Positions 4,254 through 64,000 of a DNA stretch of 64,000 bases are shown piece after piece. The notes below the pieces were generated by a model that was not told the DNA's origin, made no database searches, and saw nothing but the letters and a program-made list of their open reading frames with translations. Within the stretch, counting starts at the first letter, position 1. The number at the start of each line of letters is the position of its first letter. A program made the translations under genes and the position numbers. Location: IMG/VR virus record IMGVR_UViG_3300049846_000628, positions 1 through 64,000 of that record, one strand, 5' to 3'.

Positions 4254-5315
4254 TTAGAGTGCGTTGCCTCGTGGAAGAACCTCCTCTGGGAACACAAAGT
4301 TCTCATGAGGTTGATCTACTGGAGCCATCCACGCTCTAAGACCCTCATTAAGGAGGATATTCTTCGTGTAGAACGTTTCAAACTCCGGATCCTCAGCGGC
4401 ACGGATCTCTTGACTTACAAAGTCGTAAGCACGAAGATTAAGGGCAAGACCAATGATACCAATGCTGGAAGTCCAAAGACCCATAACTGGTACAAAAAGC
4501 ATAAAGAAGTGCAACCAACGCTTGTTACTAAAAGCAATACCGAAGATCTGAGACCAGAATCTGTTAGCAGTAACCATTGAGTAGGTTTCTTCTTCTTGAG
4601 TTGGTTCAAAAGCCTTGAAAGTGTTCGCCTGCTCACTATCCTCATACAGTGTGTTTTCTACGGTTGCTCCGTGAATCGCACAGAGTAGTGCTCCACCCAG
4701 TATACCAGCAACTCCCATCATATGGAAGGGGTTGAGGGTCCAGTTGTGGAAACCTTGTAGGAACAGCAGAAACCTGAAGATAGCAGCAACACCAAATGAA
4801 GGTGCAAAGAACCAACTGGACTGACCCAGTGGATACATCAGGAACACGCTGACGAATACAGCGATGGGTCCAGAGAAAGCAATAGCGTTATAAGGACGAA
4901 TACCAACCAGTCGTGAAATCTCAAACTGGCGAAGCATAAATCCAATCAGGCTGAAAGCCCCGTGGAGCGCCACAAAAGTCCAGAGTCCCCCAAGTTGGCA
5001 CCACCTGACGAAATCCCCCTGAGACTCAGGACCCCAAAGTAGAAGAAGAGAATGACCCATAGAATCTGCGGGGGTTGATACTGCGGCTGTTAGCACATTA
5101 CAACCTTCTAAAAAACTTGAAGCAATACCGTGTGTATACCACGATGTCGTAAATGTAATGCCAGTCAACCAACCACCAAGAGCAAGATAGGCACAAGGTA
5201 TAAAAAGTAATCCAGACCATCCAATAAACACAAACCTATCTCGTTTCAACCAATCATCAACTAGGTCAAATAAACCTCGTCGTTGATTTTGTAAAGAAAT
5301 TGTAGATGAAACCAT
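4254..5315 (-). CDS. psbD: Photosystem II D2 protein
   Basis: DDWLKRDRF..., C-terminal [10 protein letters not shown]; true start ATG 5315 with GGAGG RBS (ORF track starts too early at 5372). Confidence 0.98.
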
Positions 5316-5381: not shown

Positions 5382-6020
5382 CTACTTACTCTTCTTTTTC
5401 ATAGGAGTATCTGGGTCAAGTCCTCTTTCTATTCTATATTGTCTCCATCTTTCCTTTGCTCTTTCACTACATTTATTTTTACCTTCTTCTGTTTTAGGTC
5501 CTTGGACTTCTGGTTTTTTTCTATTTCCTTCATCCCAAGATTTCTTACAACCTTCACTTAATTTTTTCTTATGTTCTTCTGTTTTTGGAGCATAAGAAGC
5601 ACCAGGAATAAATGTCCCTTCTTGGAACTTTCTTTTTAGAGTTTCACTTCTTTTCTTATTACTTTCTTCTGTTTGAGGAACACCAGTTTTTGTTTTCCTC
5701 ATCTTTTCAACTGCTTCTGGTTTTTTAGGTTTTCCTAAATGAAGCAATCTTAATTTTTCCTTACTTTCTTCACTCATAGGTCCTCTATTTTCTCTTCCCC
5801 TTTCTTGTCCCAACTTCATAAGAAGAGAAATAACTTCTTCTTTACCTATCATACCAGATAGACCCATCCAAGCAATTCTATCCTCCTCCTTTCCATATTG
5901 TTCCCACAATTTTTTATGTGCCTCTGCGTGTTCCTCAATAGTCATTTCAACAAGATTAGAAGGGTCATCAGTTCCTCCCATATGTCTTGGAATAATATGA
6001 TGCTTGTGAGTAAGGGTCAT
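5382..6020 (-). CDS. HNH homing endonuclease with NUMOD3-like repeats
   Basis: HKHHIIPRHMGGTDDPSNLVEMTIEEHAEAH motif; basic MSEESKEKLR/KTEEHKKKLS repeats. Confidence 0.9.
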   Translation of the reverse strand: MTLTHKHHIIPRHMGGTDDPSNLVEMTIEEHAEAHKKLWEQYGKEEDRIAWMGLSGMIGKEEVISLLMKLGQERGRENRGPMSEESKEKLRLLHLGKPKKPEAVEKMRKTKTGVPQTEESNKKRSETLKRKFQEGTFIPGASYAPKTEEHKKKLSEGCKKSWDEGNRKKPEVQGPKTEEGKNKCSERAKERWRQYRIERGLDPDTPMKKKSK

Positions 6021-6127: not shown

Positions 6128-7521
6128 TCATTTTCTAAAAAGTCGTTCAAGGTTTTCTTTGTTCTTGAAGAGTTCATAGGATTTGATTTGCTCTCCATAA
6201 TACTTACTGATGTGCTTACACAAATCTTCTTCTTGTTTAGTAATATCCATATTATGTTTGTCTTTCAGGATAAGGATAGTTTCAATATCTTTGAGAGAAC
6301 TAAATGGAAGGTCTAAAAATTCTTCATAAGTCATTTTGCCCTCATAGCAGTAATCACAGCATCTCTTACTGTTTTTCCTTTTAGATGGTTCATACGAGAC
6401 CCACCATTCATAAAAACCCAATCACTTTCACCATTCATTTTGAGATTGTGTGCTTGGAACTGATTGAGTAGAAATTCAAGGATTTCTGTGTCTGTTGGTT
6501 GTTCAGTCATAGTTTATTCCTATAAGTGTATGTAATTTCTCCAGTTTCCTTATTCATCAGGTATGCCCAGTCAGTTGGAATTGTATCACAACAATCCCGA
6601 AACTTTTCAGTTGAAGATACTTCCATTACAATAGGAAGATTGTTAGAGTGATGATGAAAGATTGCTACAAGTTTCATTAGGTCACCTGATTTACGAAAGT
6701 TGGAACTTCACCACAAATCTTATTTGCCTCAGTATCATTCACACCATAAGATTTCCTACATTCTATCACAATCTCATAAGATTTCAAGAACATCTCTCTG
6801 TCCTTTTGAGTATTGTAAGTGTTTAGTAGTTCCATGGAAAGGAAATAACCAGTGACGATGAGAAGTGGAATGATGAGAGTAAAGATAAAGAGTTTCATTT
6901 CATTCATAGTAGGACATATCATAACTACCTTCATTATAACCCATTTGAAAGACTTCTTGGGCAAACTTCACAAAGGCATCAAAGTTTCCAGAATACTCCC
7001 AACCATCATTCTCATCCCAATCTTCTTCAAAGTGTTCTTTTACAAGTTTGAGGACTTCTTCATCTAAAATCATTTGAGTGCCTCCAATTCAGTAGCAATA
7101 CTCAAAATTGCCTCACGAATTTCGTCATTACGACCTTCCATTCCTGCGTCGTATTCTTTGTCCCCATAAAAACACCTATAATCGTCGGGGGCAACATTAT
7201 CAGCAAGAACACGAAGGGCAGAGGCAAATCCATCACGAATTCTTCCTCCGTGAGAAAATACTTCATCAGCAGCATCTATGATTGCTTGTGCTTTGGGAGA
7301 AAGGTCAGTCATCAGGCATCCTCCAAACGAATGTACTTTTCAAATAATCCTCTCATATCATAAAAATACGATCGTGCCCTATCAAGAACAGCAGTATCAT
7401 AATCTTCTTGTGTGGGTTCCTCTTCCATTTCCATATCCTTCCAAACTTCCAAGAAATCTTCAACAGACATATGGTATTCCAGAGGAATGTATGCGATTTT
7501 GGGAATGATTGAGTTAGTCAT
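6128..7521 (-). CDS. Run of ~7 small hypothetical early-type genes (cargo between psbD copies): 6128..6334, ~6331..6510, ~6507..6675, 6677..6907, ~6900..7072, 7070..7312, 7312..7521
   Basis: Abutting ORFs with ATGA/TAATG overlaps, from ORF track and manual reading; no recognisable families. Confidence 0.6.
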
Positions 7522-7699
7522 CGGTTTGGTTGCTTATGAGAATATTATACCATCAAAAAAGGCACCTGCGAAGTGCCCTTGTTCCAGTTTAGAAAGTGTC
7601 TTTTATATTTTTACCTATTATCAGTTTGTTCTCTGTATCTCTGTAAATCTCTAAACAATCCATTCACACCAATAAAGATTAGATACAATCCCAAAAAGG

Positions 7700-7807
7700 T
7701 CATACAGAAGTCCTCACGGAATCTAAGAGGTTTTGTTTAAGCCAGTCATCAAGGACATCGAACCAACCTCTCTGTGAAATGGGCGGTGAAAGTGTTGAAG
7801 AAGTCAT
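7700..7807 (-). pseudogene. psbD: Orphan 5' fragment of psbD (24 D2 codons, then 11 unrelated codons and a stop)
   Basis: MTSSTLSPPISQRGWFDVLDDWLK|QNLLDSVRTSV*; GGAGG RBS and own promoter. Confidence 0.9.
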
Positions 7808-7827
7808 AACCTCCAATCGTATTTCTC

Positions 7828-7862
7828 ATATTTATCTTAACATTCCTTAACAAAGAAGTCAA
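7828..7862 (-). promoter_or_regulatory. Original psbD promoter (sigma70-like plus late-like)
   Basis: TTGACT-17-TAAGAT overlapping GATAAATA; GTTAAGGA-AT-GTTAAGAT direct repeat. Confidence 0.7.
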
Positions 7863-7981
7863 CCCCAATAGATGACTCCAAGAGTGAAGAAAAGGAATAT
7901 AAGAATAGTGAATACCATAAGACCTACACCTAACCAGTTTACCCAGTTAGGCATAGGTTCGTGCTGAGGATTATGAGACAT
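7859..7981 (-). CDS. Small membrane protein (40 aa, MSHNPQHEPMPNWVNWLGVGLMVFTILIFLFFTLGVIYWG)
   Basis: Manual translation; start overlaps the end of the GIY-YIG gene. Confidence 0.6.
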   Translation of the reverse strand: MSHNPQHEPMPNWVNWLGVGLMVFTILIFLFFTLGVIYWG

Positions 7982-8645
7982 TGGTTTTGTGTTTTTGTTT
8001 TCTATATTTCCAATTTTGGTTTCCTTTTTTTGCTTCGCTTAATTTTTTTCTAGTTTCTTCTGATGGTGTTTTGCCTTTATGTGCTTCACTCATTTTCTTT
8101 TTGGTTTCATCGGATAATTTTTTACCTTTCATATTCTGATTACCTTTTTGTGCTTCACCAACTTTTTGTTTAGTTTCATCAGAAAGTTTTCTACCAAGAT
8201 TCCAAGTATTTCCCATCATTCTCTGCCTTATTTTATCTTTATGTTCCTCCGTTAATTTCATTCCTTTTCTTTTTTCACTTATTTTTTGTTTTTGTTCTTC
8301 CGTCATTTTTTTACCATAGTTGGGATTTTTTTCACCAACTCTCATTTCACTTAATTTTTTTCGTGTCTCTTCATTTACCAAAACACCAGAAGCACCTTCA
8401 CCACCATTAGTTCTGTTGCGAAGAATACCAGTTCCCAAATCCTTCCTACCAAATACATCAATCATATAGATTTCGTGTTTAAATGCTTCTTCTTCAGTTA
8501 AGTTTTTCTTCAAAAATATTATTCTAGATTTATCTTTTGGTGGTCTTATATCACCATTCATTTTATTATAAATTCTTTTTCCTTTTCCCTTTCCAATATA
8601 ATAAGGAGTTTTATCCTCTCGCAAATAAGCGTAAGTGTAATACAT
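7971..8645 (-). CDS. GIY-YIG homing endonuclease with NUMOD3 repeats
   Basis: YYTYAYLREDKTPYYIGKG..., repeated SDETKKKMSEAHKG. Confidence 0.92.
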   Translation of the reverse strand: MYYTYAYLREDKTPYYIGKGKGKRIYNKMNGDIRPPKDKSRIIFLKKNLTEEEAFKHEIYMIDVFGRKDLGTGILRNRTNGGEGASGVLVNEETRKKLSEMRVGEKNPNYGKKMTEEQKQKISEKRKGMKLTEEHKDKIRQRMMGNTWNLGRKLSDETKQKVGEAQKGNQNMKGKKLSDETKKKMSEAHKGKTPSEETRKKLSEAKKGNQNWKYRKQKHKTNVS

Positions 8646-8798: not shown

Positions 8799-10139
8799 TT
8801 ATCCTACAGTCGGTGCGGTGAGAGCAACAGGAGTGCTTTCAGCAGCAGCAAGGTCAAGAGGGAAATTGTGCAATTGTGTTATCGTAAAGACTCTTTATTC
8901 TTTACTTCTTACTGTCGCCAGTAAGTTCAGACTATCTCTTCATCCTTATGTTTATTAAGGAGTCGGGCATTCGTGGGTAGATTATTGTTGGGACTCACTA
9001 CCTAGTCGTTAGACCTTTCAGAAAACTTAAACCCTTTCTGACTTGGTACGGGATTGTCTCATAGAGAGTTTCCCCGTTTAACCCGATTTTTCTAATGCCT
9101 ATTACTAGGCAACAACACCAACAATTCTAGCGTTGCGCTCGTGCATTACCTCCATTCCCAGTCCAGCACGGTTGAGAACATCAGCCCAGGTGTTAATAAC
9201 TTTACCCTGACTATCAACGATAGACTGGTTGAAGTTGAAACCATTCAGGTTGAATGCCATCGTAGAAACACCAAGAGCGGTGAACCAGATGCCTACAACG
9301 GGCCAGGCAGCAAGGAAGAAGTGCAGCGAACGGGAGTTATTAAAGGAAGCATATTGAAAAATAAGGCGTCCGAAATAACCATGAGCAGCAACGATGTTAT
9401 AAGTCTCTTCTTCTTGACCGAACTTGTAACCATAGTTCTGTGACTCGTTCTCGGTGGTTTCACGAACCAGTGAGGAAGTAACCAGAGAACCGTGCATAGC
9501 ACTGAACAGAGAACCACCGAACACACCAGCAACTCCAAGCATATGGAAGGGGTGCATCAGGATGTTGTGCTCTGCCTGGAACACAAGCATGTAGTTGAAC
9601 GTACCAGAGATACCCAGAGGCATCGCATCAGAGAAAGAACCTTGACCGAAAGGATAGACAAGGAACACCGCACTCGCAGCGGCAACAGGTGCAGAGTAGG
9701 CAACGCAGATCCAAGGACGCATACCCAGACGGTAGGAAAGTTCCCACTCACGACCCATATAAGCATAGATGCCGATGAGGAAGTGGAAGACTACCAGTTG
9801 GAAAGGTCCACCGTTGTAAAGCCACTCATCTAGGGAAGCAGCTTCCCAGATGGGGTAAAAGTGCAGTCCAATAGCATTGGACGAAGGAATCACAGCACCA
9901 GAGATGATGTTGTTTCCGTACATGAGTGAACCAGCAACGGGTTCACGGATTCCATCGATGTCCACAGGAGGAGCAGCGATGAATGCAACGATAAAGCAGA
10001 TTGTTGCAGCGAGTAGACAAGGCACCATCAATACACCAAACCACCCGACATACAAACGATTATCGGTGCTGGTGATCCAGTTACAAAATTGATCCCAAAT
10101 ATTTGATTGTGATTGTTGACGTGAAAGTGTAGCAGTCAT
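8799..10139 (-). CDS. psbA: Photosystem II D1 protein, spliced: exon 1 10139..9129, exon 2 8870..8799 (360 aa)
   Basis: MTATLSRQQ...HERNA / [23 protein letters not shown]; E130-type (GREWELS). Confidence 0.97.
8871..9128 (-). mobile_element. Group I self-splicing intron (258 nt, no ORF) in psbA
   Basis: Exon ends in U, intron ends in G; P1 AACGCU/GGUGUU with U.G pair; P10 AAUUGU/ACAAUU; P7 GACUA/UAGUC; removal restores HERNA-HNFP. Confidence 0.95.
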
Positions 10140-10270
10140 TTGTTTAAAAAGGGTAAGTAAAAGTTCGGGGGAACGAACAGTTGTAAGTATCTCCCACAGC
10201 ACCCTCCACTGTGGGTATAAGAGACGTATTTTACATGGATAGTCTCGGTAAGGAGTATTAGTCCCTTTTC
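10140..10270 (-). ncRNA. Structured psbA 5' leader (possibly PhotoRC-II-like motif)
   Basis: Hairpins GAGAC...GTCTC and CCCACAG-TGGAGGGTG-CTGTGGG; motif name from recollection only. Confidence 0.5.
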
Positions 10271-10282
10271 TCCATGGTCAAT

Positions 10283-10353
10283 GTTACGAAACATTAAAGA
10301 TCCGTTACATTTGTTTACCTATTTATCATAGCACTTCATGAAGCAGAAGTCAA
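10283..10353 (-). promoter_or_regulatory. psbA promoter with HLR1-like boxes
   Basis: TTGACT(10353-10348)-17-TATGAT(10330-10325); GTTACATT-TG-TTTACCTA at 10304-10321 (+). Confidence 0.65.
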
Positions 10354-25735: not shown

Positions 25736-25802
25736 AAGGTATGATTTGATATCTAGTTATTATACTAAAAAAGGTGGGTTTATGCAACCCACCTTTATGT
25801 GC

Positions 25803-26209
25803 TCAGGCTCGCCACCAATTCTTTTACTGGAAATTGGAAACCAGGCGGGGTAACCCCATCCGCACCACCAATCCTTTAAAGAGAGATTGGAAACTCAATG
25901 GGTCATTGACTCCACCACCTAGTTTACAAACAAACTAGGAAAGGATAGTTGGATTAATTTTGGAACTTCAATAGCACCATAAAAGGCACACAATACAAGA
26001 ATATCCCAAAACTTATACTTGATAGCAAAAGGAATGACGAAAACATTCCCAATACACTTTACAAGCAATCCAGTTTTTGGATCTCCCCATAGAAGGACAA
26101 AGTATCCTGAGAGGAGAAGAATGTTACCGATGTAACGCATTACATCGGTGTTTTTCATTAAGGGGGATTTCATCACCGACCAGGGCTTAGTTTTAAGTCA
26201 TAACCGAGA
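25803..26209 (-). ncRNA. Multi-hairpin structured RNA (manA-motif-like), interrupted by an ORF
   Basis: GACTTAAAACT..CCCTGGTCGG 5' part; three TTTCC-stem-GGTGG units; ends TGGCGAGCCTG before a terminator-like hairpin. Confidence 0.55.
25919..26176 (-). CDS. Small membrane protein (85 aa)
   Basis: Hydrophobic ORF; start and stop lie in the RNA structure elements. Confidence 0.6.
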   Translation of the reverse strand: MMKSPLMKNTDVMRYIGNILLLSGYFVLLWGDPKTGLLVKCIGNVFVIPFAIKYKFWDILVLCAFYGAIEVPKLIQLSFPSLFVN

Positions 26210-31349: not shown

Positions 31350-32864
31350 TCAGAACGTAAACTTGGTCTGAATCACACCACCAAAGTTGGAAGATGTACC
31401 AGCAAATGCCTGGTTGTTAGAGGCATAGAACACTGCAGGAGTTACAGTGATATTATCGGACACCTTATACTTGTAGAATACTTCCCACATCGTTGCATCC
31501 TTATCCAGTCCTTCAGCATTACCAGGTTGACCGATGGCGAAACCAGCGGAATTACCCTTAGCAAACACATCAGACCACTGGAGACCAGCATACCAAGTCT
31601 GAGAATCAGTAGCACCAGCAGGAGTTGCCTGACCTGCTGCATCCAGGCTTACGGTGTTCCAACCATAACCACCACTCACAGAAGGAATAATACCAGACTT
31701 AGAGGGTTGCCAATAAGCACTCAGAGAATATCCATTTGAGGTTTGACCAGCAACAAGAGCACCAGACTTACCACCAACAGCATTGAAGGTACGAACACGG
31801 GTGCCTTCAGTACCATAACGGTAACCGAATGCAATACCATAGTTAGGAGCACGATAACCAATCTGAGCAAGAGTGTTCAGAGCACCAGCTTCATTGAACT
31901 CACCCTTAGTGGAATCAGAACCACTTTGAGCAACATAGTTCACGCCAGCGACGAAACCACCTTTACCTTTTTTGGTAGGTTGTACCCATTGAGCACCAAA
32001 ACCAGAACCAGTTGCCTTGTTATAGACACCAGGAGCACCAGCAAGTTGGAAGAAGTCCAGAATCTCCGACTTATATGCAGTAGGAATCCAAGTCATCTCA
32101 GTGTTACGAACCAGAGCACCAGCAGTCAGAGTCACACCCTTAGCAAGTGCAGGGAACTGATAGTAGAGACGGTCAAGAGTAACTGCGTTTGCAGTGCTCT
32201 CTGCCTTATCCAGTTTGAATAGGGAAGAAGATGAACCGAAAGGTTGACTGGAGAAGTTACCAGAACGCAGACGAGTGCGGAGCAGGTCTTTACCAGTGAA
32301 CGAAGTATCAAGGTTCAGACGGAGATCATAGTTGAATGCAGTGTTACCAACATTCGTGCTAGCAGGATTCTTGGAAGTACCAGGAGTCCAAGCATTATCT
32401 ACGCCACCCAGAACAAAGTTTGCTTCACCACGCAGTTTGGTAGTGGTGGAGAACTGGGTTGCTTCCAGTTGACCAACTTTGGTTTCCAGACTTGCAACCT
32501 TACCTTGAATAACGGTGAGTTCGTCACGGAACTCATTAGCAAGACGCTTGAGTTCATCAGTAACTTCAGTCACACGGTCAAGGCAAGCATTCAGGAGTGC
32601 TGCTGCCTCATAGCGAGTCATTGCCTTACCACCAGCAAAAGTGCCGTTGGGGTAACCAGCAACGCAACCATAACGCTCTACAAGGTTGCTGAGTGCCTGA
32701 TATGCCCAGTCAGTAGGTTGCACATCAGAGAATTGGGTGACGCTTGTAGCCTGTTGTGCAGAATATTGATTGACTGCCGCCATATTAAGGTCTGCAGCAT
32801 TCGCGGCAACAGGAGCAACCATTCCCAGAGCAACAGGTGCGAGCATCAGTTGTTTGAGTTTCAT
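31350..32864 (-). CDS. Cyanobacterial SLH-domain porin (Som/OprB family)
   Basis: Signal peptide; FSDVQPTDWAYQAL SLH; QFSTTTKLRGE; C-terminal KFTF. Confidence 0.93.
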   Translation of the reverse strand: MKLKQLMLAPVALGMVAPVAANAADLNMAAVNQYSAQQATSVTQFSDVQPTDWAYQALSNLVERYGCVAGYPNGTFAGGKAMTRYEAAALLNACLDRVTEVTDELKRLANEFRDELTVIQGKVASLETKVGQLEATQFSTTTKLRGEANFVLGGVDNAWTPGTSKNPASTNVGNTAFNYDLRLNLDTSFTGKDLLRTRLRSGNFSSQPFGSSSSLFKLDKAESTANAVTLDRLYYQFPALAKGVTLTAGALVRNTEMTWIPTAYKSEILDFFQLAGAPGVYNKATGSGFGAQWVQPTKKGKGGFVAGVNYVAQSGSDSTKGEFNEAGALNTLAQIGYRAPNYGIAFGYRYGTEGTRVRTFNAVGGKSGALVAGQTSNGYSLSAYWQPSKSGIIPSVSGGYGWNTVSLDAAGQATPAGATDSQTWYAGLQWSDVFAKGNSAGFAIGQPGNAEGLDKDATMWEVFYKYKVSDNITVTPAVFYASNNQAFAGTSSNFGGVIQTKFTF

Positions 32865-32986
32865 AAAGTTTGTTTTTTTAGTACTAAACGACATACTGAG
32901 TTTCCGTGCAAATAGTTGCGGCACGGTCACATCAGGAGTCTATCTTAACATTTTCTTTGGGATCAGTCAAGCTTTTTGGTCTTTTA

Positions 32987-33551: not shown

Positions 33552-33691
33552 GTAAGAGACCTCCTGGTTTGTGCATCGTTGATAGGCATAGGAGGGGCAG
33601 GTCTTATGCGGAGTTTGGACCCCCGCTGCCTATGAAAGTATTATAGGATAGAGAGGGGCTTACGTCAAGCCCCTCCAACTATTCTATTGTA

Positions 33692-33952
33692 TCAAACTTC
33701 TACCGTGATCAGTTTGGAAGCATACTCATGAGCATACGAAGTGCGAGCACCGTGATGCCCCCAACCAATCCAACTGTACGCATAGTCCATGTAACGATTG
33801 ATAGATTTACCAGGAGTCTTCATACGACTCTCAATCTCTTTCCATTGGACTTCATTCGTAAGATAACGAAGTTGCGTGTGAAGTTCTGACGGAGAACCAC
33901 CATACTTCTTAGCAAAATCACCCAATCCATAATAACGATTGGCAGATGTCCA
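33692..33952 (-). pseudogene. Orphan 3' fragment of the tail-lysozyme-like gene (86 codons, no start codon)
   Basis: WTSANRYYGLGDFAKK...KLITVEV*; 58/86 aa identical to the C-terminus of 35581..36276 by manual alignment. Confidence 0.9.
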
Positions 33953-33956
33953 TTCT

Positions 33957-34752
33957 AATTTTATTTACCAAGTTCTACTGGTAATTTGATGTCGTTTAGT
34001 TCGTCATAAAGAAGTTTAGCAAAAATAAGATGTGGTTTCTGTCTTGTTTCTATTGCTGAACTTGTAGCAACACTCCACATAATATCAAGTTGTAGTTTAT
34101 CAGGTAGTTTCTTCATCAGGTAGTTCCTTATTCAAATCAACACCATCTAAAACTTTATCTGCCCATTTTAGTGCTTCAATATTCTCAATAATAGATTTGA
34201 TTTGTTTGAGATTATCATAAAGTTGTTTATTGAAATCATAACATTCAGTCAAATGTTCTATGTTGTTGTCCTCAAAGTTAGTTTCCTCACGGATTTCCCA
34301 AGACAAACCATCCATATCTGCTGCGGTTTCTGTGATAAAGTATTCAAGTGTTTCAAGTAAAGTCATCAGTTTTCCCCATAGATACTTCTACTTCCATTTC
34401 ATTCATAATCATTTGAAGTTTTTTGACTATATTGGTTCGTGCTTCCTCTGTGGAAGAACCAGTCCAATAATCACCGTGACTTATGGAGTGTAGCACAGTA
34501 TCGGTGAGAATGTATAAATCTAATGATGTGAGTTTAGTCATCATCAGAACTCCATTTGGTGCTTACATTACTTCTTTCCCAACCTTCATCATAACCCACT
34601 TTGAAGCCTTCTGTGTAGATTAGAGCAGCAAACTTCAAGAGTTGTCGTTCCCAACACTCCCAGTAATCTGATTGTGTCCCATCATCTTTTTCACCCACGA
34701 ATGTATCAAACCCACAGGTTTTAGCAAGTTTTAGGATTTGTTCGTTAGTCAT
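33957..34752 (-). CDS. Run of small hypothetical cargo genes (34100..34366, 34353..34544, 34534..34752 and a short one near 33960-34100)
   Basis: Abutting ORFs downstream of an early promoter module. Confidence 0.6.
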
Positions 34753-34832
34753 CGGTTTGGTTGCTTATGAGAGTATTATAAGACATCAAGAGGCATCTTT
34801 AAAGTGTCTCTGTGCCAGTTCTTCAAGTGTCA

Positions 34833-35483
34833 TCAAACAACTCTACCATACCAAAAACCACTTGGAAGTTCATCAATAGAATTTATATATTTGTTTTCAT
34901 TTCCATTTGTAATCCACTTTTTACCATAACAAGGATTTTTCTCACCAAGTTTTGCCTGAATATGTTTTCTTTTTGTTTCTGGATTTTGATGAGATTTGAT
35001 TGCTGCCTGTCTATGTTTCTCAACTATTTCTGGACGATTATGTGCTAATTTTCCACTTCTACTTTTTTTATTTTTGATTTCTGGTTTATTCAAAGTTCTA
35101 ATCAAGTTTTTTCTTGCTTTCTCTTTAAGTTTTGGATTACTCATAGGATTGTATTCTGTTTTCATCAACTCACTTCTTTTCTTATTTGCTTCTTCACCAG
35201 CACCTTTATTACAATAAAATCCAGTAGAAGTTTGTTTTGCTCTATTAGCAAAGTGTGGATTTTTATCTACTTCATAAAAGTCGTGGAGAGCACATTCTGC
35301 TGCCAGGGCTTTCTCCACACTATCAAAAGTTTCTAATATTATTTTTTGAGTTGGATTGAAAGTTTTATCTTTGAAACTTCCAAAATAACTTACATCTTCT
35401 TCTGGAAGACATTTACATTCTCTTTTTCCAATATATCCCCTTCCATATTCCTCATAGGAATAATACACATAAAAGTGTTTCAT
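34833..35483 (-). CDS. GIY-YIG homing endonuclease
   Basis: FYVYYSYEEYGRGYIGKR...YFGS...ALAAE..LH..ANRA. Confidence 0.9.
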   Translation of the reverse strand: MKHFYVYYSYEEYGRGYIGKRECKCLPEEDVSYFGSFKDKTFNPTQKIILETFDSVEKALAAECALHDFYEVDKNPHFANRAKQTSTGFYCNKGAGEEANKKRSELMKTEYNPMSNPKLKEKARKNLIRTLNKPEIKNKKSRSGKLAHNRPEIVEKHRQAAIKSHQNPETKRKHIQAKLGEKNPCYGKKWITNGNENKYINSIDELPSGFWYGRVV

Positions 35484-35580: not shown

Positions 35581-36276
35581 TTAGACATCAGCAAGAACCA
35601 ATCGTTTAGCATAGTCATAAGCATATTGTGTTCTTGCTCCATGGTGTCCCCATCCAATCCATTCATAGGCATAATTCATATACCTATCAATAGATTTTCC
35701 AGAAACTCTCATTCTGTTTTCAATACTCTTCCATTGTGGTTCAGTAGTAATATACCGAAGTTGAGTATCAGCAGTAGAAGGATTGCCTCCTATTTTTTTA
35801 GCAAAAGCACCCAGTCCATAATAACGAGAAGCAGAAGTAAATTGTATCAAACCATAACCTCTTCCACAATTATAGTATGAGGTTCTACTACCACCTTCGC
35901 AAATGTTAGGAATAAAAGTTGATTCCTGACGAATATTTCCCATAATGGTAGCAAGGGCGTTTCTGTCTTTAATTCCAATGTCCTGGAAATAATCCAGGGC
36001 AACATTTTCATTTTCATTACACCCTTTACAAATTAACCTTTTTTCTTTTGGCTTTGGTAATGCAACCTCTCGGATTGCTGTCTTCTTTTCATCTACAAGA
36101 TCAAACTCTTTGATAATAGCAAATGGTTTGGTTGTTGGTTCCACTGGTGGTGGAGGACCTTGCATCTTGTAGTTGACGAATGGCAGTGATGCCGTACTGG
36201 TTGTAACCGATGCCAGAAGAGGCAGGGCTACTGTAAAGAAATTTTGCACTAGTTTTAATTGAACTCTACATCCCAA
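35581..36276 (-). CDS. Phage tail-lysozyme-like cell-wall hydrolase
   Basis: ALATIMGNIRQES...GYGLIQFT; N-terminal signal-like segment. Confidence 0.75.
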   Translation of the reverse strand: MGCRVQLKLVQNFFTVALPLLASVTTSTASLPFVNYKMQGPPPPVEPTTKPFAIIKEFDLVDEKKTAIREVALPKPKEKRLICKGCNENENVALDYFQDIGIKDRNALATIMGNIRQESTFIPNICEGGSRTSYYNCGRGYGLIQFTSASRYYGLGAFAKKIGGNPSTADTQLRYITTEPQWKSIENRMRVSGKSIDRYMNYAYEWIGWGHHGARTQYAYDYAKRLVLADV

Positions 36277-36461: not shown

Positions 36462-36923
36462 ATGAAAAGATTAGCACTGGTCTTTTCGTTATTTTTTACT
36501 ACACCTGCTTTTGCTGCTGAAATTACAAACAAAATTGTTGACTCCGTACAATTAGGCGTTCAGGGTGCAGCGGTCCAATCAAATAGAGTAGGTGCTTCCT
36601 ACTCAGTCTCAGGAACAAATATCGACGTTACAACTCTTGGTGGAGTTGGCGGCGCAGGTTCCTACAACATCAATACAAACGGTGCGGCATTTAGTTTTGC
36701 CGAAACCTCCATTACTGCAGATACTGTCGTCACCACACAGTCGGCGGCTTCTGGAACAATTGCTTCACCAAATCTCTATAGCGATTCTACCACTCAATTA
36801 GGTGGTTCTGCTGGTTCTCTTGCAGGAACTTTAAGCCCAACTGGTGTTCCTACTGTTACTGCAGGTGGTCCTGGAACCACTGCAACTGCTCAAAGAACGG
36901 TTGAACTGAGCGTATTCAAGTGA
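36462..36923 (+). CDS. Secreted hypothetical protein
   Basis: Signal peptide MKRLALVFSLFFTTPAFA. Confidence 0.7.
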   Translation: MKRLALVFSLFFTTPAFAAEITNKIVDSVQLGVQGAAVQSNRVGASYSVSGTNIDVTTLGGVGGAGSYNINTNGAAFSFAETSITADTVVTTQSAASGTIASPNLYSDSTTQLGGSAGSLAGTLSPTGVPTVTAGGPGTTATAQRTVELSVFK

Positions 36924-37282
36924 AACATATAACTCCCGTTTTGCTGCTAGCAACGGGACTTATATCTCCTTGCATCGCAGCCCCAGTTACGCCCAACTTT
37001 ACGAGTGGGACAATTACTTCGGAAACAAGAACTCGTACCGAAGTAGTTGAGGTTATCAAACAAGTAGAATATTCAACCGGAAATTCTTATACTGTTACTG
37101 GTACAAACATCAATATTCCAGACCGTCCAGGTCCAGGGGCGAACTATAGCATTATCAATCAAGGTGCTCCATTCCAGTTTAGTGAAACTCAATTGACTCC
37201 TGGAATTGCTAAAGAGACATGGATAGACCGAAAAACAACAGAAGAATCTATAACAAATACTATATCGGTCTTTACGCAATAA
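36920..37282 (+). CDS. Secreted hypothetical protein
   Basis: Signal peptide; GTGA overlap. Confidence 0.7.
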   Translation: MKHITPVLLLATGLISPCIAAPVTPNFTSGTITSETRTRTEVVEVIKQVEYSTGNSYTVTGTNINIPDRPGPGANYSIINQGAPFQFSETQLTPGIAKETWIDRKTTEESITNTISVFTQ

Positions 37283-61728: not shown

Positions 61729-62722
61729 AAGAAAACTGTTCTTTTGCCGAAGCATCAAGTTGTTGCATTACTTCTTCAGTAAAATACTGATCGGGATTTT
61801 TTAAGATCTCTTTTGCGTAAAGTTTTTTACCATTGATCTCATAACGCCCCGCAACATTTTTCCAGAGTCCGCCGAGTTCCCCGAGTTCCAAAAGACCATA
61901 ATACCGATCAAGACCGCGCTCATCATAAAATAGACGGACTTCAACTTGTTGATTCTCCTTACTCAAACGCGACTTAGCAGTCTTTGCCTTAATAATGTTT
62001 CCGACAACTTCCTTTCCATCTTTTTCTTTTGACTTACTAAGATATATGATAGTAGAAGCGGCGTACTTAAGACCGCTACCACCACCCATCTCCTTTGTAG
62101 GAACATAAGCACCGATAACATCATAAGTATGGTTGGTAACAATCATAGGAATGTTTGCCTGCCCCAACTTCAAAGTGAGCATACGGAAAGCACCTTTCAC
62201 AAGTTGCGATTTAGTCATATCACGAACTTGCTTGTCGTTGAGTGCGTCAGTAATTTCTTTCTCAGTTGAAAGCATACCCAAAGAATCCAACACAAACATA
62301 CAAGGTTTGCGTTCACCTTCAGGTTTCTTAAGGTAAATATCCACCGCTTTGAGTGCCTTACCACGGAACTCTTCTACGGTGACAACATTAACCACGACAA
62401 GACGAGATGTGTCGATGCCGCGTGACTCCAAGAGTGATTTGGTAATAGCGGCTTCAGTATCAAAGTAGAGACAATACCCATCGGGGTTATTATCAAGAAA
62501 ATTCTTAACCACGGCGAGAGAGAAAAAAGTTTTTCCAGTAGAAGACTCTCCAGCAATAGCAGTAATCTTATTCCCAGATACGCCGCCAAATATGCTACCT
62601 GAAACCAGTGCATTAAAAATGTATGAACCCGTATCAACATAAGTCTCAGTCTCATCAATATCAGATGCTAGTTTGGTGTACTCTCCACCAACTTCTTTTA
62701 CAATTTCTTTAAGAAAATCCAT
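61721..62722 (-). CDS. uvsX: RecA-like recombinase
   Basis: AGESSTGKT; VLDSLG; MGGGSGLKYAAS. Confidence 0.95.
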   Translation of the reverse strand: MDFLKEIVKEVGGEYTKLASDIDETETYVDTGSYIFNALVSGSIFGGVSGNKITAIAGESSTGKTFFSLAVVKNFLDNNPDGYCLYFDTEAAITKSLLESRGIDTSRLVVVNVVTVEEFRGKALKAVDIYLKKPEGERKPCMFVLDSLGMLSTEKEITDALNDKQVRDMTKSQLVKGAFRMLTLKLGQANIPMIVTNHTYDVIGAYVPTKEMGGGSGLKYAASTIIYLSKSKEKDGKEVVGNIIKAKTAKSRLSKENQQVEVRLFYDERGLDRYYGLLELGELGGLWKNVAGRYEINGKKLYAKEILKNPDQYFTEEVMQQLDASAKEQFSYG

Positions 62723-64000
62723 TAGGCAAAAAATAAATCAAGGTTTACAGTTTTTTCTACGTTCCATCCAATTGAATCAAGAATTGATTTCAATGGATCC
62801 ACAAAACTCTTTTCAAATTGTAGTTCATAGTCAATGTATTTGTCAAGACCAAGTTCTTTTGGAAAATCTTGGATGAAAGAAATTACATTCTCCTGAATTA
62901 TATTTGGTTTTTTCAAGAAAATGAACTTGACTTTCTCGCCATTATTAATAAGTGAATATTTATTAGTCAGTTTTTTCTCCTTTATATAATGATTAAAGAG
63001 AAGTGCTCCACGAATATGAATGGGAGTTTTGGGGGCATAAATTGTTGATGATGCTTGATACTTCCTAACATCAGAAGCAGTTCTTGGAAAAGCAATTTGT
63101 TCTGGAGGAAGTGCTTTAAATTCTTTACGACATTTTTCAATAAAGTCAATTACATCTTCTTCAGTTCCACTCATCATAAGTTTTAACCCATCCTTAATCA
63201 TTTGGCGACAAGGAGCTGGGGTTGATGATTTGACTGCCTCAATACCCATCATCTTCAGTTTGGGTTCTTCATACCGAACACCTTCACTATCCCACACGTT
63301 CAGAATGTAACGCTTTTTAGCAGTCCAGATTCCACGCTCAGCAATATTCTCACGCTTCATCTGCATCTTCTGATCGTATGCATTCACATACTCAGCCAGT
63401 TCTTGGTAGCAACTCTCAATATACTTCTCAAGTTCCACCTGACAGATCTTATCAAGGAACGAAACAACGCCTTCAGTAGTTTTCTCTCTTCCTTCGTATA
63501 CACGGTCAACCAAAGGACCCATATTGAGGTAGATAGAATCAGTATCTGAAGCAATAACATAATCAACTCCATCAGTTTTGAGAATCTTGTTTAGATAGGC
63601 ATTCATCTTGTTCTCAATCCAACGAATAGAAACCTGACCAGACAAGGTGATTGCCTCAGCATTTGCTAGTTTGTAATAACGGAAATACTGATTGCCGATA
63701 GCACCATAAGCAGAGTTAAGTTGAATCTTCCTCGCCATTTGGATGTTGTTGCACCGAGCAATCTCTTTTTCCAATTCCTTTGTCTTTTTCTTTTCATACT
63801 CTTGCTTTGCTACAAGCATTTTCTTTTTGTAGATGGTGCGATCTTCATAAATTTTTTGCATTAGTTCTGGAAGGAATCCACGAACATCCTTTCGGAACAT
63901 TGCACCATTCGCACAAACTGCCTTATCCTTATACAGTTCAAATGTAATTTCTTGATTAAGAATCTTATCAACAGTTACATTTGGATGCCTTTCCTCCAGA
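62722..64000 (-). CDS. Family B DNA polymerase (T4 gp43-like), C-terminal part; start lies beyond the window
   Basis: KIQLNSAYG; SDTDS; frame open to the window end. Confidence 0.97.
   Translation of the reverse strand, partial: LEERHPNVTVDKILNQEITFELYKDKAVCANGAMFRKDVRGFLPELMQKIYEDRTIYKKKMLVAKQEYEKKKTKELEKEIARCNNIQMARKIQLNSAYGAIGNQYFRYYKLANAEAITLSGQVSIRWIENKMNAYLNKILKTDGVDYVIASDTDSIYLNMGPLVDRVYEGREKTTEGVVSFLDKICQVELEKYIESCYQELAEYVNAYDQKMQMKRENIAERGIWTAKKRYILNVWDSEGVRYEEPKLKMMGIEAVKSSTPAPCRQMIKDGLKLMMSGTEEDVIDFIEKCRKEFKALPPEQIAFPRTASDVRKYQASSTIYAPKTPIHIRGALLFNHYIKEKKLTNKYSLINNGEKVKFIFLKKPNIIQENVISFIQDFPKELGLDKYIDYELQFEKSFVDPLKSILDSIGWNVEKTVNLDLFFA

What the first reader, a model, noticed from the sequence alone, without database searches (positions are those of the whole stretch)
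7514..7600. The psbD and lysozyme cassettes share an identical 28-bp promoter/RBS/start module
Seen: TTAGTCATCGGTTTGGTTGCTTATGAGA occurs at ~7515-7542 and ~34747-34774. Each is followed on the + strand by ATTATA (-10 TATAAT on minus), a GGCAC..GTGCC-type hairpin over the -35 region and a CCAGTT-N4-AAGTGTC box. The cargo ORFs at ~6900-7072 and 34534-34752 also look related (xxEExLKL...LxKFA..GYxEG). Inference: a repeated early-gene module provides homology for shuffling cargo into endonuclease cassettes.
Basis: seen in the sequence. Interest (0 to 1): 0.62.

Follow-up and report, generated by a model that had tools for sequence, protein, structure and literature searches.

The report
Portable terminator-promoter cassette of cyanophages
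The repeated 28 bases are the promoter-leader end of a roughly 95-base terminator/early-promoter spacer that this freshwater cyanophage and its relatives reuse in front of many unrelated small genes, and at whose edges gene blocks have been swapped, much like the 'PeSL' cassettes known from T4-type coliphages.

Summary
The repeat is real. It is a 29-base exact match (7513-7541 and 34744-34772) and occurs only twice in the 211-kb genome.

It is not private to the psbD and lysozyme islands. It is the best-conserved end of an intergenic cassette that reads, on the minus strand: stop codon, a 21-nt conserved box, a GC hairpin lying over a weak -35, TATAAT, a leader of about 22 nt, then ATG. There are 9 clear copies in this genome, 17 in Synechococcus phage S-SRM01, one in the S-PM2 ORFanage, and 226 distinct copies in fetched viral contigs.

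The exact 23-nt leader sits in front of 13 unrelated first ORFs. Nine of the 29 shared bases are the ORFs' own start; both ORFs begin MTN even where no cassette precedes them.

Loss of homology between relatives piles up at the two edges of the cassette. One copy in this genome is a chimera of two S-SRM01 copies that lie 4.75 kb apart.

Both window copies head small-ORF operons inside islands beside homing endonuclease genes. Each island is flanked by a partial duplicate of the gene it sits in (psbD 5' end, tail-lysozyme 3' end).

Best reading: a cyanophage counterpart of PeSL regulatory cassettes, with a new conserved box and a marked association with GIY-YIG genes. No transcription start, termination or recombination intermediate was observed directly.

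The parts
7513..7541 (-). Copy 1 of the 29-nt exact repeat: 20 nt of 5' leader plus ATGACTAAC, the start of ORF69
34744..34772 (-). Copy 2 of the 29-nt exact repeat: 20 nt of 5' leader plus ATGACTAAC, the start of ORF72
7522..7604 (-). Cassette 1, the whole intergenic spacer. Box 7600-7580; hairpin plus U-run 7579-7555 with a -35-like TTCGCA at 7572-7567; TG-extended TATAAT at 7549-7544; leader 7543-7522; ATG 7521-7519
34753..34832 (-). Cassette 2, starting one base after the GIY-YIG stop codon. Box 34831-34811; degenerate hairpin 34810-34781 with a -35-like TTTAAA at 34803-34798; TATAAT 34780-34775; leader 34774-34753; ATG 34752-34750
6331..7521 (-). Cargo operon 1: ORF69 (7312-7521), ORF80 (7070-7312), ORF57 (6900-7073, ORF72 family), a small membrane-like ORF, ORF56 (6507-6677) and ORF59 (6331-6510). 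None matches Pfam or PHROGs. ORF69 and ORF80 are 88% and 74% identical in protein to neighbouring genes of one S-SRM01 operon
5382..6020 (-). HNH endonuclease gene at the 3' end of cargo operon 1, abutting the upstream region of psbD
4254..5315 (-). Full psbD (D2). Its real start is the ATG at 5315; its own upstream region runs to about 5380
7736..7862 (-). Partial duplicate of psbD: about 55 nt of upstream region plus the first 24 codons, ending at DDWLK. It is 93-95% identical to the psbD of marine Synechococcus phages. It marks the upstream edge of island 1
7971..8645 (-). GIY-YIG/NUMOD3 homing endonuclease gene, preceded by a hairpin and a T4-type late-promoter motif TATAAATA at 8679-8672
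34833..35483 (-). Second, distantly related GIY-YIG-type endonuclease gene. Its stop codon abuts box 2. It has its own hairpin (35540-35523) and TATAAATA (35515-35508)
33961..34752 (-). Cargo operon 2: ORF72 (34534-34752), ORF63 (34353-34544), ORF88 (34100-34366) and ORF51 (33961-34116). ORF72 and ORF63 are 92% and 73% identical in protein to genes of the same S-SRM01 operon that holds the ORF69 and ORF80 homologues
35581..36276 (-). Full tail lysozyme gene (Phage_lysozyme2). It is only 73% identical in DNA to the S-SRM01 gene
33680..33954 (-). Duplicate of the lysozyme 3' end (77-aa ORF at 33692-33925). It is 65% identical in protein to the full gene's end but 87% identical in DNA to the 3' end of the S-SRM01 lysozyme gene, so it is probably the original end. 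It marks the downstream edge of island 2
33625..33669 (-). Box-less relative of the cassette (GC hairpin, TATAAT, similar initial transcribed bases) in front of the tRNA cluster

Best explanation
The 28-mer is the 3' part of a roughly 95-nt intergenic regulatory cassette of a freshwater T4-like cyanophage lineage.

Anatomy. Read on the minus strand, the cassette starts 0-4 nt after the stop codon of the gene before it. It consists of:
1. a 21-nt box, consensus GACACTTGAAGAACTGGCACA;
2. a GC-rich hairpin whose sequence varies but whose pairing is kept, usually followed by a T-rich run;
3. a weak -35-like hexamer inside that hairpin;
4. an almost invariant TATAAT, 39-41 nt after the box core;
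5. a conserved initial transcribed stretch and a leader without a Shine-Dalgarno sequence;
6. the ATG, 21-25 nt after the -10.

Inferred function. The hairpin ends the upstream transcript. The -10 lets the host primary-sigma RNA polymerase start a short early operon of small ORFs. Each block is therefore transcriptionally self-contained.

Inferred recombination role. The same cassette stands in direct orientation at many junctions and in many related phages. It can therefore serve as a stretch of portable homology at which the phage's recombination machinery deletes, inserts or swaps blocks, as shown experimentally for PeSLs of T4-type coliphages. Crossovers are seen here in the box and between the -10 and the ATG.

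The two window copies. They are two members with the commonest leader variant. Each heads a differently truncated version of one operon type; its S-SRM01 counterpart is a single operon in the hyperplastic region. Both lie in islands next to homing endonuclease genes. The islands were probably placed by endonuclease-driven repair, which left a duplicate psbD 5' end and a duplicate lysozyme 3' end.

Shown: the anatomy, copy numbers, conservation, chimeric junctions and island structure. Inferred: promoter and terminator activity, early timing, and recombination at the cassette as the mechanism.
For: Family and anatomy:
- nhmmer finds 9 strong and about 5 weaker copies in the genome, all on the sense strand, and 17 in S-SRM01.
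- There are 226 distinct copies in 118 sequences.
- Box-to-(-10) spacing is 39-41 nt in 188 of 215 copies. The -10 is TATAAT in 179 of 215. The hairpin segment has a median folding energy of -13.4 kcal/mol with z -2.7.
- The scan tool calls promoter-like sites at both window copies.

Portability:
- The exact 23-nt leader occurs at 43 places, in front of 13 unrelated ORF clusters and behind 18 hairpin variants.
- Homology between the window and contigs L147, L169 and L141 stops within a few bases of the leader ATG (34744-34746), with different cargo beyond.
- L082 and S-SRM01 carry an extra 57-aa ORF between the leader and ORF69.

Crossover:
- The cassette at genome position 135188 has the upstream flank of the S-SRM01 copy at 76.0 kb and the downstream part of the copy at 80.76 kb. 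The switch lies inside the box.

Breakpoint pile-up:
- Of about 1,800 true ends of homology among loci, 101 fall within 30 nt of the box edge and 75 within the 20 nt of leader and ATG. The background is about 3-4 per 10 nt.
- Contigs of another metagenome break exactly at 7600.

Islands:
- psbD without the 2.49-kb insert occurs in other populations, shown by joints 5317>7808 and 5326>7820.
- The psbD and lysozyme partial duplicates are confirmed.
- The cargo homologues lie together in one S-SRM01 operon, whose syntenic place in this genome is empty.

Precedent:
- PeSLs are defined as running from the stop codon to the ATG, with measured promoter and terminator activity and crossovers mapped between -10 and ATG (PMC2839356; PMC4122927).
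Against: - No transcription start or 3' end was observed. Only assembled contigs, not raw reads, were available.
- The -35 is weak, typically 3-4 of 6, little better than a misplaced control.
- The site 2 hairpin is degenerate, and the simple scan called neither hairpin a terminator.
- Breakpoints at the cassette's edges are expected for any conserved spacer between mosaic genes, whatever the mechanism. The next, cassette-less gene junction is also enriched, about 87 against 247.
- No strict four-gamete incompatibility was found between hairpin variants and ORF clusters.
- Some leader-ORF fusions can be explained by simple deletions of promoter-proximal genes.
- The function of the 21-nt box is unknown.
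Confidence: 0.7

Rival explanations
1. This is only a conserved early promoter and leader. The identity of the two copies reflects purifying selection on a strong -10, start site and leader, plus the fact that both first ORFs natively begin ATGACTAAC. On this reading the cassette plays no part in recombination, and mosaic boundaries fall there only because it fills gene junctions.
For: - The -10 and the bases after it are nearly invariant, and the spacing is fixed.
- The S-SRM01 homologues of ORF69 and ORF72 start ATGACTAAC without a cassette in front.
- Junctions without a cassette are also enriched for breakpoints.
- No four-gamete violation was found.
Against: - The chimeric cassette at genome position 135188 has its switch point inside the box, and the 4.75 kb between the two parental copies is missing.
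- An identical leader stands before 13 unrelated ORFs, while other cassettes carry quite different leaders, so the leader is not universally constrained.
- There are about 2.8 times more breakpoints at the cassette than at the next junction.
Confidence: 0.22
2. The cassette, above all its 21-nt box, is the landing site of the GIY-YIG homing endonuclease family. The enzymes would bind the conserved box and cut nearby, so the endonuclease genes, and whatever travels with them, spread to many cassette-bearing junctions. This does not exclude the best explanation.
For: - 15 of 42 endonuclease-like ORFs end directly at a box and none starts directly after a cassette. The background is 136 of 2,738 (Fisher p 1.5e-9).
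- An allele pair with and without the gene (L144 and L077) places the insert (hairpin, TATAAATA late promoter, GIY-YIG) between the upstream gene's end and the box.
- Multiple paralogous GIY-YIG copies occur per genome.
- Contigs from run X4 join position 7600 to a GIY-YIG N-terminal region.
Against: - Most cassettes have no endonuclease gene next to them.
- The box stays intact beside the endonuclease gene, so immunity of the carrier would need another cause.
- The fetched loci were chosen because they contain cassettes.
- No cleavage data exist.
- The end of an operon is a harmless place for any selfish gene to sit.
Confidence: 0.2
3. The cassette is itself a small selfish mobile element, like a MITE, that copies itself into intergenic regions.
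For: There are many dispersed copies with conserved ends.
Against: - It always lies in one orientation relative to the genes and always fills the whole spacer from stop codon to ATG.
- No terminal inverted repeats or target-site duplications were seen.
- It is absent from 185,579 prokaryote genomes apart from chance-level hits.
Confidence: 0.03
4. The repeat is a chance match or an assembly artefact of a metagenome-derived genome.
For: The genome seems to come from a metagenome.
Against: - None of 100 shuffles gave even one match.
- Independent contigs from other samples carry both junctions: L040 and L140 for site 1; L160, L147, L169 and L141 for site 2.
- S-SRM01 and S-PM2 isolates carry the same cassette.
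Confidence: 0.01

Closest known systems
PeSLs (promoter-early stem-loops) of T4-type phages RB49/phi1, T4/PST and KVP40/nt-1 (Arbiol et al. 2010, PMC2839356; Comeau et al. 2014, PMC4122927)
   Same: - A composite terminator hairpin plus host-type early promoter fills the spacer from stop codon to ATG.
- Many direct copies are concentrated among small ORFs of hyperplastic regions.
- They lie next to indels and replacements between relatives.
- Crossovers fall between the -10 and the ATG.
   Different: - The host and lineage differ: a freshwater cyanomyovirus of the Kyanoviridae.
- A strongly conserved 21-nt box, not AT-rich, stands where PeSLs have an AT-rich stretch.
- The hairpin lies over a weak -35 instead of upstream of a good one.
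- There is no Shine-Dalgarno sequence.
- GIY-YIG genes show a striking adjacency.
- Mini-circles and promoter or terminator activity were not tested here.
- The only paper in the searched library that mentions both PeSLs and cyanophages judged PeSLs too sparse in S-PM2 to matter (PMC4503421).
Endonuclease-flanked mobile gene cassettes of marine T4-like cyanophages (Sullivan et al. 2010, PMC3037559)
   Same: Blocks of accessory genes beside endonuclease genes occur at varying genome positions, including near psbA, with tRNA genes nearby.
   Different: Those cassettes carry metabolic genes (zwf, gnd, petE, PTOX). That paper describes no shared promoter/leader spacer and no target-gene duplications.
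Free-standing homing endonucleases of T4-type phages (T4 Seg and Mob; cyanophage F-CphI next to psbA, Zeng et al. 2009, cited in PMC3037559)
   Same: - GIY-YIG and HNH genes lie between or next to conserved genes.
- The two window GIY-YIG genes, like the L144 copy, have their own late-promoter motif.
- Presence varies between close relatives.
- Flanking sequence is co-converted, which fits the duplicated psbD and lysozyme ends.
   Different: Here the endonuclease gene travels with, or next to, a promoter-led operon of unrelated small ORFs, and repeatedly abuts one repeated regulatory sequence rather than one unique target gene.
Integron gene cassettes and attC sites (comparison from general knowledge, not tested)
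   Same: Short conserved structured repeats delimit exchangeable single-gene or few-gene units.
   Different: No integrase, no attI and no promoter-less cassettes are present. Here each unit brings its own promoter, and exchange is probably by general homologous recombination.

Membership tests
PeSL regulatory cassettes | A sigma-70-like early promoter (-35, about 17 nt, -10) inside the spacer | tested here: met
   TATAAT is present in 179 of 215 copies. Both window copies score 10 of 12 with a 17-nt spacer. The -35 is weak across the family.
PeSL regulatory cassettes | A stem-loop acting as terminator just upstream of the promoter | tested here: inconclusive
   A stable hairpin is present in most copies (median -13.4 kcal/mol, z -2.7). 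It overlaps the -35 rather than preceding it. Site 2's hairpin is degenerate, and the scan tool called no terminator. Termination was not measured.
PeSL regulatory cassettes | [quoted passage not shown] | tested here: met
   A stop codon lies within 0-4 nt of the box in most copies. The start codon lies 21-25 nt after the -10.
PeSL regulatory cassettes | A Shine-Dalgarno sequence at the 3' end | tested here: not met
   The commonest leader has no GGAG-like run; only some variants carry AGGA or GGAG. From general knowledge, this is usual for cyanobacterial genes.
PeSL regulatory cassettes | An AT-rich region upstream of the -35 | tested here: not met
   That position is occupied by the conserved 21-nt box, which is not AT-rich.
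PeSL regulatory cassettes | Many copies, clustered in hyperplastic regions of small non-essential ORFs | tested here: met
   There are 9 copies here (six at 135-157 kb, two at 73-76 kb... with the two window copies lying outside those regions) and 17 in S-SRM01, 15 of them at 44-87 kb.
PeSL regulatory cassettes | Associated with insertions, deletions and replacements between close relatives, with crossovers inside the element | tested here: met
   A chimeric copy, homology ends at the box edge and at the ATG, and one leader before 13 ORF families.
PeSL regulatory cassettes | Formation of excised mini-circles between neighbouring copies | not testable with these tools
   Only assembled contigs of public runs were available, with no raw reads of an infection.
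Free-standing homing endonuclease insertion | An endonuclease gene present or absent between otherwise homologous flanks in close relatives | tested here: met
   L144 against L077. The site 1 GIY-YIG region is replaced in L040 and L140. psbD without the island occurs in other populations.
Free-standing homing endonuclease insertion | The enzyme cuts the empty allele near its insertion site | not testable with these tools
   This needs a cleavage assay.

The most novel reading that the evidence does not exclude
The 21-nt box, conserved across hundreds of copies and absent from cellular genomes, could be a dedicated recognition element rather than passive homology. It would be bound either by the GIY-YIG endonuclease family (multi-site homing into a repeated regulatory sequence) or by a phage-encoded recombination or transcription factor. 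The cassette would then be the core of an active, site-directed gene-cassette exchange system in cyanophages, able to carry early genes into islands next to photosynthesis and virion genes.
Probability: 0.15. Interest if true: 0.8.

Novelty: new variant of a known kind. Interest (0 to 1): 0.5.

Why it matters
- Cyanophage hyperplastic regions hold most of the unknown genes that tune infection of major primary producers, and how these genes move is poorly understood.
- A widespread, easily recognised cassette gives three things: a ready marker for early transcription units, a concrete mechanism for modular exchange between phages, and a handle for annotation. For example, it suggests a corrected start for S-PM2p035.
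- One copy in the S-PM2 ORFanage fits an earlier suggestion that that region was exchanged with freshwater phages.
- The cassette extends the PeSL idea to a lineage where it had been dismissed.
- The box and its link to GIY-YIG genes are testable leads on how selfish endonucleases and regulatory repeats cooperate.

Tried and rejected
- Rfam holds no family for the cassette; only weak chance hits were found.
- RNAalifold on 172 aligned hairpin segments gave no consensus structure, because the stems lie in different registers. Per-sequence folding against shuffles was used instead.
- The exact box 21-mer is absent from 185,579 prokaryote genomes. A 17-base degenerate form gave 73 hits in scattered taxa. 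My estimate of the chance expectation is about 69. The box is therefore not a host regulon motif. The few hits on short contigs of cyanobacterial MAGs were not examined; I take them for mis-binned phage DNA.
- Public runs holding the region are all stored as contigs, so starts, ends, strand and rare junctions could not be read. An RNA-library contig that spans the cassette proves nothing about read-through.
- Pfam and PHROGs give nothing for nine of the ten small ORFs tested; ORF40 matches a PHROG of unknown function.
- Literature searches found no description of this box or of PeSLs in cyanophages beyond the negative remark on S-PM2. The S-SRM01 paper does not mention promoters.
- A four-gamete test between hairpin variants and first-ORF clusters found no strict incompatibility.
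- MITE-like mobility and an assembly artefact were considered and rejected; see the rival explanations.

Full report
**1. The observation.**
- The 28-mer occurs exactly twice in the window, at 7514-7541 and 34745-34772, against none in 100 shuffles. It occurs nowhere else in the 211,201-bp genome of which the window is the first 64 kb.
- Genes here run on the minus strand. On that strand the repeat reads as 20 nt of leader followed by ATGACTAAC. The exact run is 29 nt, and 36 of 39 positions agree from TATAAT to six bases past the ATG.
- Upstream, the two copies are still alignable without gaps but agree less: 17 of 25 positions over the box and 17 of 31 over the hairpin.
Its 'RBS' is not evident.

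**2. What the genome is.**
- It is a T4-like cyanomyovirus. It carries psbA, psbD, a tail lysozyme gene, tRNA genes and GIY-YIG and HNH endonuclease genes.
- Its nearest isolate in the phage collection is Synechococcus phage S-SRM01. The two are collinear at about 65-85% DNA identity outside the hyperplastic regions.
- Runs that hold the sequence are freshwater metagenomes.

**3. The repeat belongs to a family.**
- A profile made from the two copies finds a third clear copy at genome position 153396 and about ten weaker ones, all on the sense strand.
- After iteration there are 9 strong copies here and 17 in S-SRM01.
- IMG/VR contigs hold more than 120 stretches with the box pattern and 39 with the exact 23-nt leader. 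In all, 226 distinct copies were collected from 118 sequences.
- S-PM2 carries one complete copy inside its 'ORFanage'. Phages B3 and B23 carry one each.

**4. Anatomy of the cassette.**
- A stop codon lies 0-4 nt before the box in most copies, so the cassette is the whole spacer.
- The box consensus is GACACTTGAAGAACTGGCACA.
- A hairpin follows. Its sequence differs between copies, but it folds stably: median -13.4 kcal/mol, z -2.7 against shuffles, and 75% of copies have z below -1.5.
- The hexamer 16-18 nt upstream of the -10 lies inside the hairpin and is weak, typically 3-4 of 6.
- The -10 is TATAAT in 179 of 215 copies, with a TG extension in 43.
- The distance from box core to -10 is 39-41 nt in 188 of 215 copies. 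The start codon follows the -10 by 21-25 nt in most.
- At site 1 the hairpin is a 10-bp stem followed by U6. At site 2 it has decayed.
- The box is not a host motif. The exact 21-mer is absent from 185,579 prokaryote genomes, and a degenerate form hits only at roughly chance level (73 hits against my estimate of about 69).
- Rfam has nothing for the cassette.

**5. Portability.**
- The exact leader occurs at 43 places. It stands in front of 13 unrelated first-ORF clusters and behind 18 hairpin variants.
- The ORF69 family is found behind five hairpin variants. One hairpin variant is found before six ORF families.
- Close relatives of site 2 (L147, L169, L141) match the window through the lysozyme gene, the GIY-YIG gene and the cassette, down to within a few bases of the leader ATG (34744-34746). 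Beyond it they carry other cargo.
- Relatives of site 1 differ in another way. L082 and S-SRM01 have a 57-aa ORF between the leader and ORF69. The window, L040 and L140 have the leader fused directly to ORF69.
- In S-SRM01 the homologues of ORF69 and ORF72 both begin ATGACTAAC although no cassette precedes them. So 9 of the 29 identical bases belong to the genes, and the join lies at the ATG.

**6. Crossover inside a cassette.**
- The copy at genome position 135188 shares its upstream gene and the first part of the box with the S-SRM01 copy at 76.0 kb.
- It shares the rest of the cassette and the downstream gene with the S-SRM01 copy at 80.76 kb.
- The 4.75 kb between those two direct copies is missing here. 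This is what recombination between two cassettes would produce.

**7. Breakpoint statistics.**
- Among all fetched loci, I counted ends of homology that are not continued collinearly within 200 nt.
- They pile up at the 5' edge of the box (101 in 30 nt) and at the leader and ATG (75 in 20 nt). The background is 3-4 per 10 nt.
- The whole cassette collects about 247 such ends, against about 87 at the next gene junction.
- This shows that cassettes are preferred mosaic boundaries. A conserved spacer would, however, show sharp edges whatever the mechanism.

**8. The two islands.**
- *Island 1.* On the sense strand the order is: psbA, GIY-YIG gene, ORF40, a psbD duplicate, cassette 1, six or seven small ORFs, HNH gene, full psbD.
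  - The duplicate comprises the psbD upstream region plus the first 24 codons (7862-7736). It is 93-95% identical to the psbD of marine phages.
  - Contigs of other populations join 7808 or 7820 directly to 5317 or 5326. That is psbD without the 2.49-kb island.
  - S-SRM01 has no psbD.
- *Island 2.* The order is: full lysozyme gene, GIY-YIG gene, cassette 2, four small ORFs, a duplicate lysozyme 3' end, tRNA genes.
  - The duplicate is closer to the S-SRM01 gene (87%) than the full gene is (73%). It is therefore probably the original end, and the present end arrived with the island.
- *Cargo.* ORF69, ORF80, ORF72 and ORF63 have their closest homologues in one cassette-led operon of S-SRM01 at 57.3-59.6 kb. 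The syntenic place in this genome lacks them.
  - ORF57 and ORF72 belong to one 47-member family, with a third copy at genome position 135349-135543.

**9. Endonuclease link.**
- Of 42 endonuclease-like ORFs in the collected DNA, 15 end directly at a box and none starts directly after a cassette. The background is 136 of 2,738 (p 1.5e-9).
- L144 and L077 form a pair with and without the endonuclease gene. The insert is a hairpin, a TATAAATA late-promoter motif and the GIY-YIG gene, placed between the upstream gene's end and the box.
- Both window GIY-YIG genes have the same hairpin-plus-TATAAATA head.
- Contigs from run X4 break at 7600, the box edge, and continue in a GIY-YIG N-terminal region.

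**10. Comparison with what is known.**
- PeSLs of T4-type coliphages and vibriophages are defined as the spacer from stop codon to ATG. They have a terminator stem-loop and a strong early promoter, are clustered in hyperplastic regions and lie next to indels. Their crossovers were mapped between the -10 and the ATG, and they form mini-circles (PMC2839356; PMC4122927).
- The present cassette shares the logic and the crossover zone. It differs in four ways: the conserved box where PeSLs have an AT-rich stretch, the hairpin over a weak -35, the lack of a Shine-Dalgarno sequence, and the endonuclease adjacency.
- For cyanophages, the one paper in the searched library that mentions PeSLs found them too sparse in S-PM2 (PMC4503421).
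- Endonuclease-flanked mobile cassettes near psbA were proposed for marine cyanophages, without such a spacer (PMC3037559).

**11. Verdict.**
The element is a member of a widespread PeSL-like cassette family, not a private feature of two islands.
- The islands themselves look like endonuclease-associated insertions that carry cassette-led early operons.
- Promoter and terminator activity, early timing and the recombination mechanism are inferred, not observed.

Noticed in passing
L246:601-684 (S-PM2, AJ630128 9854-9937): The marine phage S-PM2 holds one complete copy of this freshwater-type cassette in its 'ORFanage'. It is followed by an ORF starting MTRKEFYEKYGD that also occurs behind the same leader in an IMG/VR contig (L167). 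The annotated start of S-PM2p035 (9900) lies inside the cassette and is probably too far upstream.
   Followed up: partly
L001:294-1052 (S-SRM01 62515-63273): The S-SRM01 gene annotated 'translation initiation factor 2' matches the window's GIY-YIG/NUMOD3 endonuclease gene in DNA (about 74%). It is one of at least six paralogous copies in that genome, so the annotation is probably wrong.
   Followed up: partly
window 31350-32930 (-): The phage encodes a 526-aa protein with an SLH domain and an OprB-type porin domain, that is, a cyanobacterial outer-membrane porin homologue, directly after the tRNA cluster. It is conserved in S-SRM01 at 78% DNA identity.
   Followed up: partly
window 25801-25898 (-), 10179-10286 (-), 33559-33595 (-): Rfam matches above the gathering score: wcaG RNA, PhotoRC-II RNA just upstream of psbA, and abiF RNA between the box-less promoter at 33625-33669 and the first tRNA gene.
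   Followed up: no
window 9105-10202 (-): psbA is uninterrupted here. The alignment to S-SRM01 is broken by gaps of about 210 nt and 912 nt in S-SRM01, in line with the intron and endonuclease reported for that phage.
   Followed up: no
window 7611-7703 (-) and 7859-7981 (-): Two very small hydrophobic ORFs lie around the psbD duplicate. The 40-aa ORF matches phrog_7358 over its full length. The 30-aa ORF has no match and lies between the psbD duplicate and cassette 1.
   Followed up: partly
G000:C1 about 197,000-206,400 and 208,200-209,800 (outside the window): Many regularly spaced short repeats, and a long internally repetitive region that also matches a repetitive region of S-SRM01 at 219-221 kb. 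They were seen only as BLAST side-hits.
   Followed up: no
window 36462-37282 (+): Two plus-strand ORFs with signal-peptide-like N-termini lie opposite the general gene direction. One carries DUF6322.
   Followed up: no
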